Below, piece by piece: positions 5,519 through 39,225 of a DNA stretch of 64,000 nucleotides. The notes under the pieces were generated by a model, which was given only the letters and a program-made list of their open reading frames with translations, searched no databases and had not been told where the DNA came from. The DNA is taken from the IMG/VR virus record IMGVR_UViG_3300017917_001342, positions 124,001-188,000 of that record, one strand, 5' to 3'. Every line of letters starts with the position of its first letter. The first letter of the stretch is position 1. The position numbers and the translations under genes are program-made.

Positions 5519-5593
5519 GGGTTTGTAGCTCAACGGTAGAGCAGGTGTCTCTAAAACATCGAGGTGTGGGTTCGAATCCCATCTTACCCGCCA
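5519..5593 (+). tRNA. amber suppressor tRNA (CTA)
   Basis: GGTGT-CTCTAAA-ACATC; acceptor has two U.U mismatches; GCCA. Confidence 0.8.
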
Positions 5594-20973: not shown

Positions 20974-22209
20974 ATGGAAAATATGTTTGAAAAATTAACA
21001 GGTTATCGTGCCGGATGTGCAGCTAAATGGAATTGGAGCACAGTTTTTTTAAACCAAGGCACAACTGCTAGCTGCCACAGAACCGATACTGATACTGTAG
21101 ATCATATATCTATACACAATTTTCATAATACCCCGCTAAAGTTGAAAACACGTCAACTGATGCAGCAAGGACAATGGCCAGGGCATGGGTGTGAGTATTG
21201 TAAACATATAGAAAACTCCGGTGGTATCAGCGACAGAATGAATTCAAATTCTCTGTTTAATGGCAAAAAGATTCCGCACGAATTGCTTGTTAATACAGAT
21301 GCAATACACACAACGCCCACGGTACTAGAAATAAATTTTACCAATTTATGTAACATGAGTTGTATATATTGCAGCGAAGGATGGAGTTCTGTATGGGAAC
21401 AGGAAAATATCAAATTCAATGATCGCATTGAACAAGCCCCTAGACTATTAAAAGGCGCAGAGTACGAAAGAATCCTGTTTGAATTCTTTCAATGGTTAGA
21501 CACAAACGTCGAACATTTGTCAGACCTACACATATTAGGTGGGGAACCATTTATTATGCCAGAATTTGACAAAACCGTCGAGTTTCTAAAAACACGCAAG
21601 TTGCCAGATTTGAATTTGGTAGTAATTACCAATTTGAAAATAACCAGAGACAAGCTAACTCAACACCTGTCGGTATTGAATTCGCTATTAGACAACAATG
21701 CCATTGGATCTGTAAGAATAGTTGCTAGTTTAGATTGTTGGGGACCGGAACAAGAGTATATACGTACTGGATTGTCCTTGCAGCAATGGGAAGACAACTT
21801 TGCATTTATAGTAAAAAACTATCGTAACATAGACATCAATGTACACAGTACAATCACAGGTCTTTCTATAAAGACCACCGACAGTTTAATAGACAAAATC
21901 AACTATTACAGGACATTGCTAGATAACAATAAAAACATTATTCATTCTAAGAATTTTGTTACAGGCTTTAGTTACTTGAGTCCAAAAATTTACCCTTATG
22001 GTTTTTTTGATAGCGATTTTGAAAAAATATTGACCAAAATAACTGATAGTTATGAGCTAGAAGAAATGAAAGGCTATAAATTATCAATTGATAACGAGCC
22101 ATATAACCCAGCTCTAATAGAAGATTTAAAACGATATCTAGATAAATTGGATTTTAGAAGAAACACAAATTGGCGTAACTATTTTTCATGGTTAGACGAG
22201 TTTAATTAA
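20974..22209 (+). CDS. radical SAM protein, paralog 2
   Basis: NLCNMSCIYC, GGEPF. Confidence 0.88.
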   Translation: MENMFEKLTGYRAGCAAKWNWSTVFLNQGTTASCHRTDTDTVDHISIHNFHNTPLKLKTRQLMQQGQWPGHGCEYCKHIENSGGISDRMNSNSLFNGKKIPHELLVNTDAIHTTPTVLEINFTNLCNMSCIYCSEGWSSVWEQENIKFNDRIEQAPRLLKGAEYERILFEFFQWLDTNVEHLSDLHILGGEPFIMPEFDKTVEFLKTRKLPDLNLVVITNLKITRDKLTQHLSVLNSLLDNNAIGSVRIVASLDCWGPEQEYIRTGLSLQQWEDNFAFIVKNYRNIDINVHSTITGLSIKTTDSLIDKINYYRTLLDNNKNIIHSKNFVTGFSYLSPKIYPYGFFDSDFEKILTKITDSYELEEMKGYKLSIDNEPYNPALIEDLKRYLDKLDFRRNTNWRNYFSWLDEFN

Positions 22210-22210
22210 A

Positions 22211-23461
22211 ATGGAAGATCAGTTTTCAAAACTCACCAATGGAAAATTTGGATGTGGTTACAAATGGGCATGGAGCACAATTTTTTTACAGCAAGGGTCT
22301 AGCTCTAGTTGTCATCGTACTATGCAGGACTTTTTTGATGAACAAACTGTGCAACAGTTTCATAACTCTCCATTGAAGCTGCAAAGTCGTAAAGCCATGT
22401 TAGATGGTCAATGGCCGGGGCATGGTTGTGAATACTGCAAAAATATAGAGGCTGCTGGCGGTATTAGTGATAGACAACAAATAAACAAAAAATTTCAAGG
22501 TCTTATTGTACCTAAAGAACTGTTAACTGATTCTACTGCAATCAATGTATCGCCTACTATGATTGAATTGCATTTTAGTAATTTGTGTAATATGAGTTGC
22601 ATATATTGTAACCAACGATTCAGTTCGGTATGGGAACAAGAAAATTTAAAGCACGGCAACATATTTGCAGATACCGAATTTCTATTAAATCACAGTGCAA
22701 CCGGTCGTATGATAGATTCATTTTTTGATTGGCTGCACTACAATATAGGCAATTTAGTTAAAATTAACATACTTGGTGGTGAACCATTTTATCAATCTGA
22801 GTTTTATAGATTTATAGATTTCTTAGCCGAGCATCCAAATCCAAATTTAGACATTACTGTGTTTTCTAATTTAAAAGTTAATGAAAATAAATTTTCATCG
22901 GCATTGAAACGATTAGAAACTTTTGTAAAATCCAACATTGTCAAAAGTGTAGAAATAGTTGCTAGTTTAGATTGTTGGGGACCTGAACAAGAATACGTTA
23001 GAACTGGGCTGTCTTTACAACAATGGGAAGATAATTTTGCACTGTTGGTAAACAATTTTCAAGATATTGAAGTACAAATTCATGGCACAATATCAAGTTT
23101 GACTATTAAAACTATCCCAGATCTACTCAACAAGATTAATTTTTACAATAGTATGCGTAGTAAACACCCAATAAGTTACTCTAATAACATACTAGTGCAT
23201 CCAAATTGCTTACAACCTGGTATATTTCCTTTGGGGTTTTTTGATGATGATTTCAACAAAATACTGCCTCTTATACAAAATCAAGCAGAACACGATGAAA
23301 TGCAAGGCTATTTCAAAACCATTAACAATACAGACTACAATCCTCAATTGATAATTGAATTGAAACAATACCTAGACACGTTGGATATCAGACGACACAC
23401 AAATTGGAAAACAGTGTTTCCATGGTTAGATCAGTTCGATGTTGACAAACATCACAGTTAG
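22211..23461 (+). CDS. radical SAM protein, paralog 3
   Basis: NLCNMSCIYC, GGEPFY. Confidence 0.88.
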   Translation: MEDQFSKLTNGKFGCGYKWAWSTIFLQQGSSSSCHRTMQDFFDEQTVQQFHNSPLKLQSRKAMLDGQWPGHGCEYCKNIEAAGGISDRQQINKKFQGLIVPKELLTDSTAINVSPTMIELHFSNLCNMSCIYCNQRFSSVWEQENLKHGNIFADTEFLLNHSATGRMIDSFFDWLHYNIGNLVKINILGGEPFYQSEFYRFIDFLAEHPNPNLDITVFSNLKVNENKFSSALKRLETFVKSNIVKSVEIVASLDCWGPEQEYVRTGLSLQQWEDNFALLVNNFQDIEVQIHGTISSLTIKTIPDLLNKINFYNSMRSKHPISYSNNILVHPNCLQPGIFPLGFFDDDFNKILPLIQNQAEHDEMQGYFKTINNTDYNPQLIIELKQYLDTLDIRRHTNWKTVFPWLDQFDVDKHHS

Positions 23462-24446: not shown

Positions 24447-24463
24447 ACAGGAAAACATATGCT

Positions 24464-24540
24464 GGTTCCGTAGCTCAGTTGGATAGAGCAGGGAACTTCT
24501 AATTCCAAGGTCGAGGGTTCGAATCCTTCCGGGACCGCCA
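24464..24540 (+). tRNA. tRNA-Arg(TCT)
   Basis: GGAA-CTTCTAA-TTCC, GCCA. Confidence 0.92.
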
Positions 24541-24586
24541 TATGTTTTCCATTGGTTAGAGATAAATACTCTAACCAGGAGCAATA

Positions 24587-25167: not shown

Positions 25168-25839
25168 ATGTTCACATATCAACACATACGTAACGAAGTT
25201 AAACGACGCTGTAAAGCACAGCCGGCAACAATGATAGTGCCATGGGTATTAGATTATATCAATGCACACTTAGCAACACTGCCACCTAACAGTGTTATAG
25301 CAGAACTAGGTACATTTGTTGGTGGTACAGCAGTTTTATTTGCACAATCGCATCCATCGTTTGTGATACACACATATGATATAAACAAGTTTGACAATTT
25401 TGCCAACAGTTCAATGCTACAGTCATTAGATAAACGATACGACCTGCCATTGCTTAACAAAGATGATATTGTTGAAATTCAACGGTTGCATTTAGAAGAC
25501 TACCCTAATATAGTAATGCATGTTGAAGATTCGGCTAAGATCACAGTTGATAATTTATCAGCAGTACTAATAGACGATAATCGAGACGAGCACTCACTAT
25601 TTGAGTTGTTACACACTATTTGGCCGTTGTTGAATGATAACGGTATGATTTTTGCAGATGACGCAGATAATCCACATATACACAATGCGTTTTATAAATT
25701 TGCTAAAATCAAAGATTTAGAGTTGACAATATACAGTAAATGCATTAAATTAGTAAAAACAGCAGCAATGTCGGACAAAAGACAGTTTGATTTTAAAGAC
25801 ACCCTGTTGCACAGAATAACAATAGGAGACCACGTATGA
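25168..25839 (+). CDS. class I SAM-dependent methyltransferase
   Basis: IAELGTFVGGT, YDI, VLIDD. Confidence 0.65.
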   Translation: MFTYQHIRNEVKRRCKAQPATMIVPWVLDYINAHLATLPPNSVIAELGTFVGGTAVLFAQSHPSFVIHTYDINKFDNFANSSMLQSLDKRYDLPLLNKDDIVEIQRLHLEDYPNIVMHVEDSAKITVDNLSAVLIDDNRDEHSLFELLHTIWPLLNDNGMIFADDADNPHIHNAFYKFAKIKDLELTIYSKCIKLVKTAAMSDKRQFDFKDTLLHRITIGDHV

Positions 25840-25949
25840 GAAAAGCAGTTCACAAAGCAAACGTTAAGCGTCAGGCGCTTATGCTCAAGCGTGGTTGGGT
25901 AGGTCGAAAGAATCGCAAGCAAAAGCGCATGGCTGTTGCTGCAAGTTAA
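25836..25949 (+). CDS. 37-aa basic peptide
   Basis: AGGAG RBS; MRKAVHKANVKRQALMLKRGWVGRKNRKQKRMAVAAS. Confidence 0.45.
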   Translation: MRKAVHKANVKRQALMLKRGWVGRKNRKQKRMAVAAS

Positions 25950-26234: not shown

Positions 26235-26309
26235 GCGGAATTAGCTCAGTGGTAGAGCGTCTCGTTTACACCGAGAATGTCGGGAGTTCGAAACTCTCAT
26301 TCCGCACCA
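26235..26309 (+). tRNA. tRNA-Val(TAC)
   Basis: TCTCG-TTTACAC-CGAGA. Confidence 0.92.
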
Positions 26310-26317
26310 TAAACTAG

Positions 26318-26763
26318 TTATAGAACAACTGTTGCGCGGCGCCAATCGGCGAAAGGTTGGGCAGTTGTCATAGCAAAATAGATTTGAGCGATAGAATGTT
26401 ATGCGCGGTGCACTCTGAATGCAACAGGCGATAACAACATGGCAATAATCAAATACCGTTCGTAACGATAGAATGTTATGCGCGATGCCCTTAGAAGGTA
26501 GCAGGCGATAACAACATGGTGAGAACAACAATAGAACATGCGATTTTACTGAATAGACTGCATGTCATTGTAAATTAGAAAGCAGAATACAACATAGTTG
26601 TTGCTATAGAATGTATTCTTTTTATATTAAAATAGACTGCTAAACACTATAGAGCCTGTGTATCACTAACAAAACATTATCTAGTAAGCACAGGCCATAG
26701 ACAAGAAAACTGTTGCTAAACCTATAGAGTAGCTTTTCTTTTAGATAGAAAGGATGCCATAGG
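26318..26763 (+). repeat. array of six hairpins sharing an AGAR/(Y or A)C internal loop
   Basis: NNAT-AGAR-[stem-loop]-HC-ATNN at 26318, 26389, 26466, 26529, 26647, 26722. Confidence 0.65.
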
Positions 26764-26836
26764 AGGCAAAAATAAATTGCAAAATTATCGAATATTCTGC
26801 GTATGAATATCATAATTAGGCATAAATTAACTTAGT

Positions 26837-26912
26837 GCTGTCATAGCTCAGCTGGTAGAGCATCTGATTTGTAATCAGAGGGTCGGGAGTTCAAGTCTCT
26901 CTGGCAGCACCA
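26837..26912 (+). tRNA. tRNA-Thr(TGT)
   Basis: TCTGA-TTTGTAA-TCAGA. Confidence 0.93.
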
Positions 26913-26923
26913 TTCAATACAAT

Positions 26924-26998
26924 GTCGCGTTAGCAAAACGTTAATGCGCTGCCCCGCAAAGGTAGAGGACTGTGGTTAAATTCCCAGACGCGACTCCA
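26924..26998 (+). tRNA. tRNA-Cys(GCA), divergent
   Basis: GTCGCGT/ACGCGAC-TCCA, CTGCC-CCGCAAA-GGTAG; D loop lacks GG. Confidence 0.7.
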
Positions 26999-27129: not shown

Positions 27130-28251
27130 ATGGAAAACACTGATAAAGATTTTTATTGTGCAGCACCGTTTGTGAATAGATCGTACGATCCAAACGGTAA
27201 AGTTAAACCTTGTTGCGAATGGCACAACTTAGATACAACTGTCGACGATGAACAACAGTTGATTTCTCTACGATCTCAATTTTTACAAAACAAACCAAAT
27301 CCCTGTTGTAAAGTCTGTCATAAAACAGAAGCTGCTGGGGTACAATCTACTAGAAATGATTTTAACAACAGGTACGGTAGACCAACTGTACCTGTGCTGC
27401 GTCATTTGGATCTAAGTCTAGGCAATCTATGTAATTTCAAATGTAGAATGTGCAGCAGTTTTTTTAGCACAAAATGGGCCAGTGACGAACAAGCATTGGG
27501 ATTGATTCCACACAAGTTGTACAGACGTACCTGGGATGAATTGAAACATTTAGACATATCAAATGTAGATATGATCAAGTTCAAAGGTGGCGAGCCTTTT
27601 CTAGAACAAGAAACAATGATCAATACCCTAACTGCAATCTTATCTCAAAAAGGCTCGTTAGAAAATATTACAGTTGTTGTAAACACAAATGGATCTATAG
27701 AAATAGAACCAAGATTGATAGAGTTGTTGTCTCTTTGCAAAACTGTTAACTTAACAGTTAGTATAGATGGATACGGTAAAGTAAACGAATATCAACGCAC
27801 AGGCGCAGTATGGAATGTAATAGAAAAAAATCTATTAGATTTTCAAAAAAATCTCAACAATAACTTTGACTTATCTATATGGTCTGTGTGGACTATACTC
27901 AACATTACTAACTTAAAAACACTGTTAGGCTGGGTTACAACCAACTTGCCTAGATACAAAATCTATGGTACTACGCTGCATTTTCCAGAAGAGTTTGCTA
28001 TACGCAATATACCAGACCAACTAAAAACGCAATTTTTTAATGACATTAGCAATTGGTGTGAACTCGATCACAACGACGGTGTGCTAGAAAACAAATTACA
28101 GATTTTAAATGAGTTACAACAACAGCCTATAAAAACGATCAACGAAGTTAAATCTTACATAGATAGCCTTGACAAAGTTAGAAATGAGTCGTTTTCTTTA
28201 ATAGATCCTGTGATGTATGCGGCATTTTTTGAATCAACTGTTGACATATGA
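27130..28251 (+). CDS. radical SAM protein with twitch/SPASM domain
   Basis: CAAPF..PCC, NLCNFKCRMC, GGEPF. Confidence 0.88.
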   Translation: MENTDKDFYCAAPFVNRSYDPNGKVKPCCEWHNLDTTVDDEQQLISLRSQFLQNKPNPCCKVCHKTEAAGVQSTRNDFNNRYGRPTVPVLRHLDLSLGNLCNFKCRMCSSFFSTKWASDEQALGLIPHKLYRRTWDELKHLDISNVDMIKFKGGEPFLEQETMINTLTAILSQKGSLENITVVVNTNGSIEIEPRLIELLSLCKTVNLTVSIDGYGKVNEYQRTGAVWNVIEKNLLDFQKNLNNNFDLSIWSVWTILNITNLKTLLGWVTTNLPRYKIYGTTLHFPEEFAIRNIPDQLKTQFFNDISNWCELDHNDGVLENKLQILNELQQQPIKTINEVKSYIDSLDKVRNESFSLIDPVMYAAFFESTVDI

Positions 28252-29039: not shown

Positions 29040-29920
29040 CACGATATTAACGTTGTGAAACGTGGATGTTGTGTTTACGCATTGGGGGTTTAGCCTCAAC
29101 AGGATAAGTGCAGTGATGCACCCAAAGCTAGAAAGCCTACATACTAGCGCCAGCAGTGGTCCATCTAAACAAGCCTGAACTAGACTTGACTCGGGTTAAA
29201 CCGAAAGCAAGTCCCGTCCGTAGAAAGGCGGTAGGCAGTAAGTTAGGAATAGTGTCCGAAAGGATAGTTGCAGAGCCAGTCGGTGAGCGATAAGAGGGTT
29301 GGCGCCCAAACACTGTTCAGCCAAACTAACGAATGCTGAAAGTTAACAGGTAGGTACAGAGTCTGAGCCCGCAAGCAAAGGCATGGTACCATTTCGAGAG
29401 TGGAAGGGTTAGGCCCCGGATACTTGAAGAAACACTGATTAGTCCGCAAGACGAAAGGTATGAGGTGTGCTGTATTGGGTATGTCAAAAGCATATTCAGC
29501 AGCCGAGGTAGCACATCTCGGATAGGTTGCAAAATCAGCTAATGGTAAGCTAATTCCCTTCTAAGGAATCGATTGCAGGTTCAACTCCTGTTTTTGAAAA
29601 ATGCAAAGTCTACCTCGGTATGTAGTGTAAGGTGTCAAATACTTGAGGCGCAAGCCAATCAAGTTCAACAAAGCTCGCAAGGCAGCGTTGATTTGTGCTA
29701 GAAGTTTCGTAGCCCGCAAGGCTTAATGGTCCGCAAGATCAACGGAAAACAAGGTGCAGAATAGCTACATACGACGAGTCTACTGCCTGACTCTAAAAAC
29801 GGCGACACTGTTAATGGACTAGGTTACCGCAAGGGACTTAGTGGATGTCGGAAGAAAGCGGCTCGCAAGGCTGGCAATAATGTCCGAAGCGTTAACATCG
29901 AACGTGTAATCTCAGCGTTT
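29040..29920 (+). ncRNA. GOLLD-like large ncRNA (5' boundary uncertain)
   Basis: ~0.9 kb without credible ORF, at least 9 GCAA/GAAA-capped hairpins, GGTAGGTAC..GAGTCTGAG, GAGGTAGCACATCTC and terminal GTAATCTCAG blocks recalled from GOLLD; tRNA-cluster context. Confidence 0.6.
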
Positions 29921-38965: not shown

Positions 38966-39225
38966 CTGTTGCATTTTTAACTGCACTGTGCTATAGTGAG
39001 TTATTGATTATGCGAAAAAAGGTTCGTAGTAGCGGCTAGTAATCCAGGAACCTTGCGGCAAATAAGGTGAGAACGCCCGCCTCACACACCAGCAATGGTA
39101 AAGTAGCGAAAGCGAAGAGATGTAGGAATCTTGTCTATATGGCAAGTTGAAAACAGGGACCCTACTATTTGCCAATACCCATTAAGATCGTCTGTAGGCT
39201 AGCCAAATTTTTAAAAAGGTGTGTT

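What the first reader, a model, noticed from the sequence alone, without database searches (positions are those of the whole stretch)
26318..26763. Six-copy hairpin array with a conserved asymmetric AGAR / HC internal loop
Copies: TTAT-AGAA-CAACTG..CAGTTG-TC-ATAG; CGAT-AGAA-TGTTAT..ATAACA-AC-ATGG (twice); CAAT-AGAA-CATGC..GCATG-TC-ATTG; CTAT-AGAG-CCTGTG..CACAGG-CC-ATAG; CTAT-AGAG-TA.CTTTTC..GAAAGG.TG-CC-ATAG. Both flanking stems vary in sequence but keep pairing, so the loop is the conserved element. This is the architecture of a multivalent protein sponge (like Csr/Rsm sRNAs but with a different motif) or of an RNA antitoxin array. It is not a CRISPR array.
Basis: seen in the sequence. Interest (0 to 1): 0.75.

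Follow-up and report, generated by a model that had tools for sequence, protein, structure and literature searches.

The report
Megaphage hairpin-array RNA between tRNA genes
A 518-kb freshwater phage and its relatives carry, between two tRNA genes, a roughly 530-base non-coding RNA gene built from seven or eight different hairpins that all share one small conserved internal loop; no RNA family in Rfam matches it and its function is untested.

Summary
Window 26310-26836 (+ strand), between tRNA-Val(UAC) and tRNA-Thr(UGU), holds eight modules, not six. One is circularly permuted and one has CGA in place of AGA.

The shared core is 5'-AU-[A/c/u]GA-R...Y-C-AU-3'. This is a 3-nt/1-nt internal loop between a short sequence-conserved helix (usually CUAU/AUAG) and a helix of free sequence.

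The array sits at the same position in four further phage lineages, giving 32 hairpin modules in all. The loop C and the flanking AU/AU pairs are invariant. The helices covary (92.6% paired against 76.3% in shuffles, 0 of 500). G.U outnumbers A.C 27 to 3, so the structure belongs to + strand RNA, the tRNA strand.

Each genome or large fragment searched whole has one array. Eight other huge phages have no module. There is no Rfam match, no conserved ORF, no toxin gene, and no signal of a CRISPR array, a promoter or an origin.

The most likely reading is a stable RNA cut out of the tRNA precursor. Its repeated junction modules would dock many copies of one partner, probably a protein. The partner, and transcription itself, could not be tested. 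Rivals are an RNA-only architecture and an array of processing sites.

The parts
26310..26836 (+). Whole inter-tRNA non-coding RNA gene (hairpin array, 527 nt)
   Evidence: Lies between tRNA-Val and tRNA-Thr. Folds better than shuffles on + (z -3.5) than on - (z -2.3). Syntenic in four other lineages. No conserved ORF. No Rfam match.
26318..26373 (+). Module H1: UUAU-AGA-A..U-C-AUAG
   Evidence: The interior is replaced in relatives (32-52% identity) while the base is kept. A related strain has an apical part about 21 nt shorter with the base intact.
26389..26442 (+). Module H2: an H3-like duplicate, CGAU-AGA-A..A-C-AUGG
   Evidence: 87% identical to H3. Other lineages carry an unrelated hairpin with the same base at this position.
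26458..26526 (+). Module H3 with an extra outer helix GUUC/GAAC (core 26466-26519). This is the most conserved unit.
   Evidence: 87% identity to L105 and L107. The RNAalifold structure has 6 pairs with compensatory changes. The outer helix changes to GCUC/GAGC in L118. The loop is AGA or CGA.
26529..26570 (+). Module H4: CAAU-AGA-A..U-C-AUUG
   Evidence: 41.9 bits. 83% identical in L105 and L107. The strain variant 26541 C>T keeps a G.U pair on + but would give A.C on -.
26584..26619 (+). Module H4b, circularly permuted. The variable helix opens outward, the loop is AC / AGAA, and the AUAGU/GCUAU helix is capped by a 4-nt loop.
   Evidence: RNAalifold on three lineages gives 13 pairs, 2 of them with changes on both sides. 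In L106 and L118 a normal hairpin module stands at this position.
26647..26700 (+). Module H5: CUAU-AGA-G..C-C-AUAG
   Evidence: RNAalifold on five lineages gives 14 pairs, 4 of them with compensatory changes.
26722..26762 (+). Module H6: CUAU-AGA-G..C-C-AUAG, with 7-nt apical loop UUUAGAU
   Evidence: (40.2 bits). The same loop type sits in hairpin 2 of L105 and L107 and in hairpin 5 of L118.
26785..26815 (+).
   Evidence: 29.3 bits. The orthologues have AGA (L105) and UGA (L107). 84-90% identity.
26235..26309 (+). tRNA-Val(UAC), the 5' boundary of the array in all five lineages
26837..26912 (+). tRNA-Thr(UGU), the 3' boundary of the array in all five lineages
25836..25949 (+). Conserved 37-aa, very basic ORF, overlapping the stop of the methyltransferase gene 25168-25839. 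It is a conserved neighbour only; a link to the array is unproven.
   Evidence: Called in every array-bearing lineage. 100% identical between the window and L091 although the methyltransferase is 58% identical. No Pfam family. Only 3 clusters among 1.8 billion representatives.

Best explanation
The stretch 26310-26836 is a gene for a structured non-coding RNA of about 530 nt. It is transcribed with the surrounding tRNA genes on the + strand. Ordinary tRNA end-processing at tRNA-Val (3' end) and tRNA-Thr (RNase P at the 5' end) would release it.

The RNA is a string of seven or eight hairpins. Each holds the same two-helix junction: a short conserved helix (CUAU/AUAG), a 3-nt/1-nt loop (NGA opposite C, most simply a cross-strand G-C pair with an unpaired base on each side, the 3' one always A), and a second helix of free sequence.

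I take each junction to be a docking site, so the RNA binds many copies of one partner at once as a sponge or scaffold. A protein of the phage or the host is the most likely partner.

Shown: the RNA-level structure, its conservation, its strand and its uniqueness within the genome.
Inferred: transcription, release by tRNA processing, and the binding function.

My confidence that this is a conserved structured RNA gene is about 0.9. My confidence in the multivalent docking mechanism is about 0.4.
For: Five lineages carry the array at the same place between tRNA-Val(UAC) and tRNA-Thr(UGU): the window, L104/L105, L091/L107, L087/L095/L106 and L118. This holds although the neighbouring methyltransferase is only 57-59% identical in three of them.

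Across 32 hairpin modules the loop C and the flanking AU/AU pairs are invariant, and the loop is AGA 28, CGA 3, UGA 1.

The helices covary. 92.6% of cells pair against 76.3% in shuffles (0/500). Six of 8 pairs change on both sides. Slid controls reach at most 61%. RNAalifold finds the same junction independently in H3, H5 and the permuted H4b.

G.U 27 against A.C 3 in the variable helix places the structure on the + strand. A strain variant keeps G.U on +.

H1, H2 and H6 have been replaced between lineages (32-52% identity) but keep the junction, whereas H3, H4, H4b and H7 are 78-90% identical. One module is circularly permuted yet keeps the junction. Both points make the junction the selected unit, independent of what it is attached to.

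There is one array per record searched whole: the model hits only the array in the window's genome and in the 158-kb fragment that holds L095. It finds none in eight other huge phages.

No terminator lies inside the array, and every tRNA and every long ORF around it lies on +.
Against: No RNA run could be listed, so transcription and RNA ends are untested.

No partner was identified. The phage has no RNase III, L7Ae, Ro/TROVE or Hfq homologue. The one complex job (the 37-aa peptide with a module) was not folded and says nothing.

H3 is far more elaborate and more conserved than a simple docking site needs to be. Several apical loops share a 7-nt YUNNGAW form. Both hint at RNA-RNA tertiary contacts.

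Only five lineages of one phage clade are known, so the covariation statistics rest partly on paralogous copies.
Confidence: 0.4

Rival explanations
1. RNA-only architecture. The array is one large folded RNA, in the manner of GOLLD or ROOL, which also sit in phage tRNA clusters. The repeated junction would be a structural building block (a defined bend, or a donor of a flipped-out adenine) and would pack against loops of other hairpins rather than bind a protein.
For: A GOLLD RNA lies 2.6 kb downstream in the same tRNA cluster, and also in L105 and L107. H3 has extra helices and internal loops and is 87% conserved. The recurring 7-nt loops include CUUCGAA and CUUAGAA, which contain a UUCGA/UUAGA stretch like a T-loop, a motif that captures unpaired purines (the T-loop property is from my own knowledge). 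The module works in either connectivity, as modular RNA structural motifs do.
Against: Three of eight hairpin interiors and their apical loops are freely replaced between lineages. That is hard to square with a single fixed tertiary fold. The number of modules varies from 5 to 8. No long-range covariation was seen, though the data are too few to detect it.
Confidence: 0.2
2. Processing array. Each junction is a recognition or cleavage site for a ribonuclease. The precursor would be cut into separate small hairpin RNAs, or the hairpins would act as punctuation that directs or titrates the enzymes maturing the flanking tRNAs.
For: The array is embedded in a polycistronic tRNA cluster. The unit length of 43-85 nt, mostly 59-85, is close to a tRNA (positions). 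The linkers are A/U-rich and unpaired. AGA-AU fits the known RNase E preference R-N-cut-W-U (from my own knowledge). AUAGA(A/U)U also occurs in the leaders of 6 of 46 tRNAs, where about 1 is expected.
Against: AGAG-type modules lack the A-U after the loop. The genome has no RNase III, and several modules have only about 12 bp, too short for RNase III. Leader-trailer pairing is not a general feature of this phage's tRNAs (mean z about 0). There are no data on RNA ends.
Confidence: 0.2
3. A DNA-level element: a replication origin, recombination sites that fold as single-stranded DNA hairpins, or a row of phage promoters of the T7/SP6 type (CTATAGA resembles the -5 to +3 part of those promoters).
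For: CTATAG is a palindrome. ACTATAGAG and ACTATAGAA resemble the start region of SP6 and T7 promoters (from my own knowledge).
Against: The G.T/A.C asymmetry of 27 to 3 fits one-strand RNA, not duplex DNA or a cruciform. The upstream sequence has no fixed register. The motif is not enriched in the genome: CTATAGAR occurs 25 and 22 times with 24 expected. No single-subunit RNA polymerase frame was found (the control did not ring). The cumulative GC skew turns near 100-120 kb, 225 kb and 420 kb, not at 150.3 kb. A promoter would not explain the covarying 3' half.
Confidence: 0.05
4. A type III antitoxin-like RNA array, or decayed tRNA genes with no function of their own.
For: It is a tandem arrangement of structured units in a phage. 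The unit length is near tRNA size. The 3' half of H1 shares 9 nt with the start of tRNA-Thr.
Against: The units are not near-identical repeats. No toxin gene follows, and no ToxN frame is present. No tRNA-model match lies inside 26310-26836 even at E<=10. H3, H4 and H7 are more conserved than the neighbouring protein gene, so the array is not decaying.
Confidence: 0.03

Closest known systems
GOLLD, ROOL and skipping-rope RNAs (Rfam RF02032, RF02924 and relatives), and the two stable non-tRNA RNAs of the phage T4 tRNA cluster
   Same: They are structured non-coding RNAs of unknown function embedded among phage tRNA genes. GOLLD and skipping-rope occur in this same window. The size, a few hundred nt, is comparable.
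   Different: No sequence or structure-model match. The present RNA is built from repeated copies of one small junction with interchangeable hairpin interiors, which those RNAs are not.
Multivalent sponge sRNAs: CsrB/RsmX-Z (for CsrA/RsmA) and CrcZ (for Hfq/Crc)
   Same: One RNA carries many copies of a short recognition element spread over successive hairpins. The number of copies varies between relatives.
   Different: The element here is an internal-loop junction (AU-NGA-R / Y-C-AU), not GGA in apical loops or A-rich single strands. No partner is known. The RNA is flanked by tRNAs, not by its own promoter and terminator.
Ferritin-type iron-responsive element (UGC/C internal loop)
   Same: The local topology is the same: a 3-nt/1-nt internal loop in which the middle G pairs with the opposite C and leaves unpaired bases that a protein reads (from my own knowledge).
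   Different: The IRE needs a fixed 5-bp upper helix and a CAGUGN apical loop. Here the upper helix and apical loop are free. The bases differ (AGA against UGC). The IRE is a eukaryotic mRNA element, not a phage RNA.
Type III toxin-antitoxin RNAs (ToxI and relatives)
   Same: Tandem structured RNA units encoded by mobile elements or phages.
   Different: ToxI units are near-identical 34-36-nt direct repeats followed by a toxin gene. Here the units differ in sequence and length (31-62 nt) and no toxin gene follows.
tRNA-linked hairpin RNAs of murine gammaherpesvirus 68
   Same: Viral hairpin RNAs lie directly downstream of a tRNA-like unit and are released by tRNA-processing enzymes (from my own knowledge; the paper PMC3482243 was listed but not read).
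   Different: That is a eukaryotic virus with microRNA biogenesis. There is no shared motif.

Membership tests
Csr/Rsm-type sponge sRNA | Multiple GGA motifs exposed in hairpin loops or single strands | tested here: not met
   The conserved element is AU-NGA-R/Y-C-AU in an internal loop. The apical loops are heterogeneous.
Csr/Rsm-type sponge sRNA | Binds and titrates CsrA/RsmA dimers | not testable with these tools
   No binding assay is available. The host is unknown.
Type III antitoxin RNA (ToxI-like) | Near-identical direct repeats of about 34-36 nt | tested here: not met
   Only H2 and H3 resemble each other (87%). The other units share just the base motif, and lengths run from 31 to 62 nt.
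Type III antitoxin RNA (ToxI-like) | Endoribonuclease toxin gene immediately downstream | tested here: not met
   Downstream lie tRNA-Thr, a tRNA-Cys-like gene, tRNA-Leu and a radical-SAM gene. No ToxN frame is in the genome (the control genomes did not ring).
CRISPR array | Identical direct repeats separated by unique spacers of similar length | tested here: not met
   The conserved parts are the two complementary halves of hairpin bases, and the sequence between them is self-complementary.
Any Rfam 15 family (including GOLLD, ROOL, tRNA) | Covariance-model match | tested here: not met
   Nothing in 26310-26836 beyond two noise-level matches that reach into its 3' end (E 3.8 and 7.1, far below their gathering scores). 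Nothing at E<=1 in the arrays of four relatives.
Kink-turn | 3-nt bulge followed by tandem sheared G.A/A.G pairs (GA on both strands) | tested here: not met
   The strand opposite the 3-nt loop reads Y-C, never GA, in 32 of 32 modules. No L7Ae homologue is present.
Iron-responsive element | C-bulge or UGC/C loop exactly 5 bp below a CAGUGN loop | tested here: not met
   The upper helix length and the apical loops vary freely.
T7/SP6-type promoter | About 23-bp conserved element with a fixed register upstream of the TATA-G start, and a single-subunit RNA polymerase gene | tested here: not met
   The upstream bases have no fixed register. The motif is not enriched. No PF00940 frame was found (the control did not ring, so this last point is weak).
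New family proposed here (tRNA-flanked junction-array RNA) | At least 5 tandem modules with AU-NGA-R/Y-C-AU between tRNA-Val(UAC) and tRNA-Thr(UGU) | tested here: met
   Met in the window and in L105, L107, L106 and L118.

The most novel reading that the evidence does not exclude
The array is a new kind of phage counter-measure or takeover RNA. In this reading it is a tRNA-operon-encoded decoy whose eight junctions, spaced at tRNA-like intervals and carrying anticodon-loop-like 7-nt loops on some hairpins, trap a host factor that would otherwise act on the phage's roughly 50 tRNAs. That factor could be an RNA-binding enzyme such as a tRNA-targeting defence nuclease or a processing or modification enzyme. 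Alternatively the array could assemble with the conserved 37-aa basic peptide into a previously unseen ribonucleoprotein.
Probability: 0.12. Interest if true: 0.85.

Novelty: new variant of a known kind. Interest (0 to 1): 0.62.

Why it matters
Huge phages carry large tRNA clusters that also hide big non-coding RNAs (GOLLD, ROOL) whose functions remain unknown.

This locus adds an RNA with an unusually readable design. One small junction is repeated seven or eight times. It is kept while the hairpins around it are swapped, and it is even kept in a circularly permuted copy. That points to a single recognisable binding unit.

The unit is easy to test. Point mutations in one G, one A and one C should abolish function, so the RNA is a tractable handle on what non-coding RNAs in phage tRNA clusters do.

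If the partner is a host factor, the array would be a natural RNA sponge in a phage with a new recognition motif.

Tried and rejected
- **Rfam.** Gathering and E-value searches on the window and on four relatives gave no family for the array.
- **Close DNA relatives.** The phage collection matched only the tRNAs. IMG/VR gave no match to an 18-mer of H2/H3, and only two chance coding hits to a conserved 17-mer. The known relative L095 was not returned by that scan although it holds the pattern, so negative collection scans are weak.
- **H3-specific pattern.** No hit in genome contigs or in the visible part of viral contigs.
- **Downstream radical-SAM gene as an anchor.** Its homologues are widespread, their neighbourhoods lack the array, and the gene is absent from two related strains that keep the array.
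- **RNA evidence.** No RNA run was listed.
- **Antisense targets.** There is no complementarity of 15 nt or more elsewhere in the genome.
- **Promoters and terminators.** Counts are at chance level and nothing lies inside the array.
- **Leader-trailer pairing.** It is not a general feature of this phage's tRNAs.
- **Phage-encoded candidate partners.** No RNase III, L7Ae, Ro/TROVE or Hfq was found.
- **The 37-aa peptide.** No Pfam family. It was too short for one search. Only 3 clusters appeared in the representative library.
- **Complex prediction.** The job with the peptide and module H6 was not folded and gives no evidence either way.
- **Literature.** Two searches found no description of such an array.
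- **Motifs considered from memory and rejected on sequence.** These were the kink-turn, the 11-nt tetraloop receptor, sarcin-ricin/loop E, hairpin-ribozyme loop A, the SECIS core, integron attC and REP elements.

Full report
**Setting.** The window is bases 124001-188000 of a 518,643-bp virus record with direct terminal repeats, rated complete. Its DNA is found in pond and other freshwater metagenomes. The window holds 46 tRNA genes, all on the + strand, a GOLLD RNA (29462-29918, 234 bits) and a skipping-rope RNA (39057-39173). The finding lies in the 527-nt gap between tRNA-Val(UAC) 26235-26309 and tRNA-Thr(UGU) 26837-26912.

**The observation.** All six hairpins are present as described. The loop is therefore three bases (AGA) opposite one (C). 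Folding programs draw it as a G-C pair with a one-base bulge on each side.

Two further modules were missed. H7 (26785-26815) reads UUAU-CGA-...-C-AUAA. The other, at 26584-26619, has inverted connectivity: the conserved AUAG/CUAU helix is closed by a small loop and the variable helix opens outward, with the same AC/AGAA loop as H3.

A loose descriptor finds 60 sites in the whole genome, as many as in shuffled sequence (47-62). Six of them fall within 440 nt here. No cluster occurs in 972 kb of other phage loci. A covariance model of the module (R1) finds nothing else in the genome at E<1.

**Relatives.** The downstream radical-SAM gene was a poor anchor. The upstream methyltransferase (25168-25839) led to four further lineages:
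- L104/L105 (88% protein identity)
- L091/L107 (58%)
- L087/L095/L106 (57%, on a 158-kb fragment)
- L118 (59%)

. In every one, five to eight modules, counting a permuted one in L105 and L107, lie between tRNA-Val(UAC) and tRNA-Thr(UGU). In L091 a second methyltransferase gene sits between the tRNA-Val and the array.

DNA runs from four other waters also hold the array. One strain has a shorter H1 interior with the base intact. In three of the four runs (X2, X3, X4) the first loop base of H3 is changed from A to C.

**What is conserved.** In 32 hairpin modules the loop is AGA 28, CGA 3, UGA 1. The opposite C and the two flanking pairs (A-U, U-A) never change.

The next two pairs of the outer helix covary (C-G 9, U-A 7; U-A 10, U-G 4, A-U 2), and so do all four tested pairs of the inner helix. 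Overall 92.6% of cells pair against 76.3% in shuffles (0 of 500), and sliding the partner drops this to 17-61%. RNAalifold, given only orthologous hairpins, recovers the same junction in H3, H5 and the permuted H4b with compensatory changes.

Between the window and L105 or L107, the hairpins H3, H4, H4b and H7 are 78-90% identical, whereas H1, H2 and H6 are 32-52% identical. In other words those three were replaced apart from the junction. In the window, H2 is a copy of H3.

**RNA or DNA, and which strand.** In the variable helix G.U pairs number 27 and A.C oppositions 3. On the other strand, or in a DNA cruciform, these would be reversed or equal. The variant 26541 C>T keeps G.U on +. The + strand also folds better against its shuffles (z -3.5 against -2.3).

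No open frame is conserved. The indels among strains are not multiples of three. The structure therefore belongs to an RNA of the tRNA strand.

No terminator-like site lies within the array, and promoter-like matches (one on +, two on -) are at the chance level for the region. Co-transcription with the tRNAs and release by tRNA end-processing is the simplest route, but this is inferred.

**What it is not.**
- No Rfam family matches.
- It is not a CRISPR array.
- It is not a ToxI-like antitoxin. The units are dissimilar, and no toxin gene or ToxN frame is present.
- It is not a kink-turn, because the short strand reads Y-C, never GA.
- It is not a row of T7/SP6-like promoters. The upstream register is not fixed, the motif is not enriched (25 and 22 against 24 expected), no single-subunit polymerase frame was seen, and a promoter would not explain the covarying 3' half.
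- It is not at a GC-skew turning point.
- It has no antisense target of 15 nt or more in the genome.
- Eight other huge phages of 200-608 kb have no module, and the 158-kb relative has modules only in its array.

**Mechanism.** The junction is kept while the attached hairpins are exchanged, duplicated or even permuted, and the number of copies drifts between 5 and 8. The junction is therefore the selected unit, and the number of units matters more than their identity.

That is the pattern of a multivalent docking RNA. I take each junction to present a cross-strand G-C pair with an unpaired A beside a sequence-specific 4-bp helix, read by one partner in many copies. A protein is the most likely partner, but none was found. 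The phage lacks RNase III, L7Ae, Ro and Hfq homologues.

A very basic 37-aa ORF next to the methyltransferase is strikingly conserved: 100% between the window and L091, where the methyltransferase is 58%. It is clade-restricted. It is a candidate only by proximity, and two further lineages seem to lack it.

Two rivals stay open. The first is an RNA-only fold. H3 is elaborate, and several hairpins carry 7-nt YUNNGAW loops, some of them T-loop-like. The second is an array of nuclease sites. The units are tRNA-sized, the linkers are A/U-rich, and AUAGA(A/U)U also occurs in six tRNA leaders.

**Verdict.** This is a new, conserved, clade-restricted structured RNA family with a repeated junction module. 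Function and partner are unknown, and transcription is untested. The sponge reading is plausible and the antitoxin reading is not supported.

Noticed in passing
window 29462-29918: A GOLLD RNA (234 bits) with a tRNA-Arg(UCU) embedded at 29527-29600. GOLLD is also present, cut by the contig end, in L107 and L105, so it belongs to the same conserved tRNA cluster as the array.
   Followed up: partly
window 39057-39173: A skipping-rope RNA (RF02924, 46.9 bits) with two long insertions relative to the model.
   Followed up: partly
window 5519-5593: A tRNA with anticodon CUA, labelled Pyl by ARAGORN. It is an amber-suppressor-type tRNA and might mean that TAG is read as a residue in part of this phage's genes. 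I did not test for in-frame TAG codons.
   Followed up: no
window 26924-26995: A tRNA found only by the Rfam model (46.6 bits), not by ARAGORN. Its anticodon loop reads CCGCAAA (anticodon GCA, Cys; discriminator U), with C at position 33 where tRNAs have U. L118 and one strain (run X2) have UU at these two positions.
   Followed up: partly
window, leaders of the tRNAs at 1089, 3820, 5437, 15223, 17377 and 34861; also L106:5808 and L118:1760: AUAGA(A/U)U, the 5' half of the module, occurs within 15 nt upstream of 6 of 46 tRNAs, where about 1 is expected. It also stands directly before tRNA-Thr in L106, and in the variant form AUUAGAAU in L118. It is not enriched genome-wide. The meaning is unknown.
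   Followed up: partly
window 24450-24554: tRNA-Arg(UCU) 24464-24540 is flanked by a leader-trailer helix of about 12 bp that includes the C75 and A76 of the encoded CCA end (z -3.9). It is the only tRNA in the window with such a helix.
   Followed up: partly
window 25836-25949: A 37-aa ORF with 13 Lys/Arg that overlaps the methyltransferase stop by 4 nt. It is 100% identical in L091 and L105 and 68-73% identical in L087 and L118. It has no Pfam family and only 3 clusters in the 1.8-billion-protein library.
   Followed up: partly
window 27130-28251, also 20974-23461: Three radical-SAM paralogues lie in the tRNA cluster. The one right after the array is missing or strongly diverged in two related strains (runs X4 and X7) that keep the array. 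Two strains (X2, X3) carry a 415-nt insertion between 26999 and 27006.
   Followed up: no
window 26322-26789 and arrays of L105, L106, L118: Successive junctions are mostly 59-85 nt apart, close to the length of a tRNA gene plus spacer. The permuted module gives one shorter step of about 40 nt (positions).
   Followed up: no
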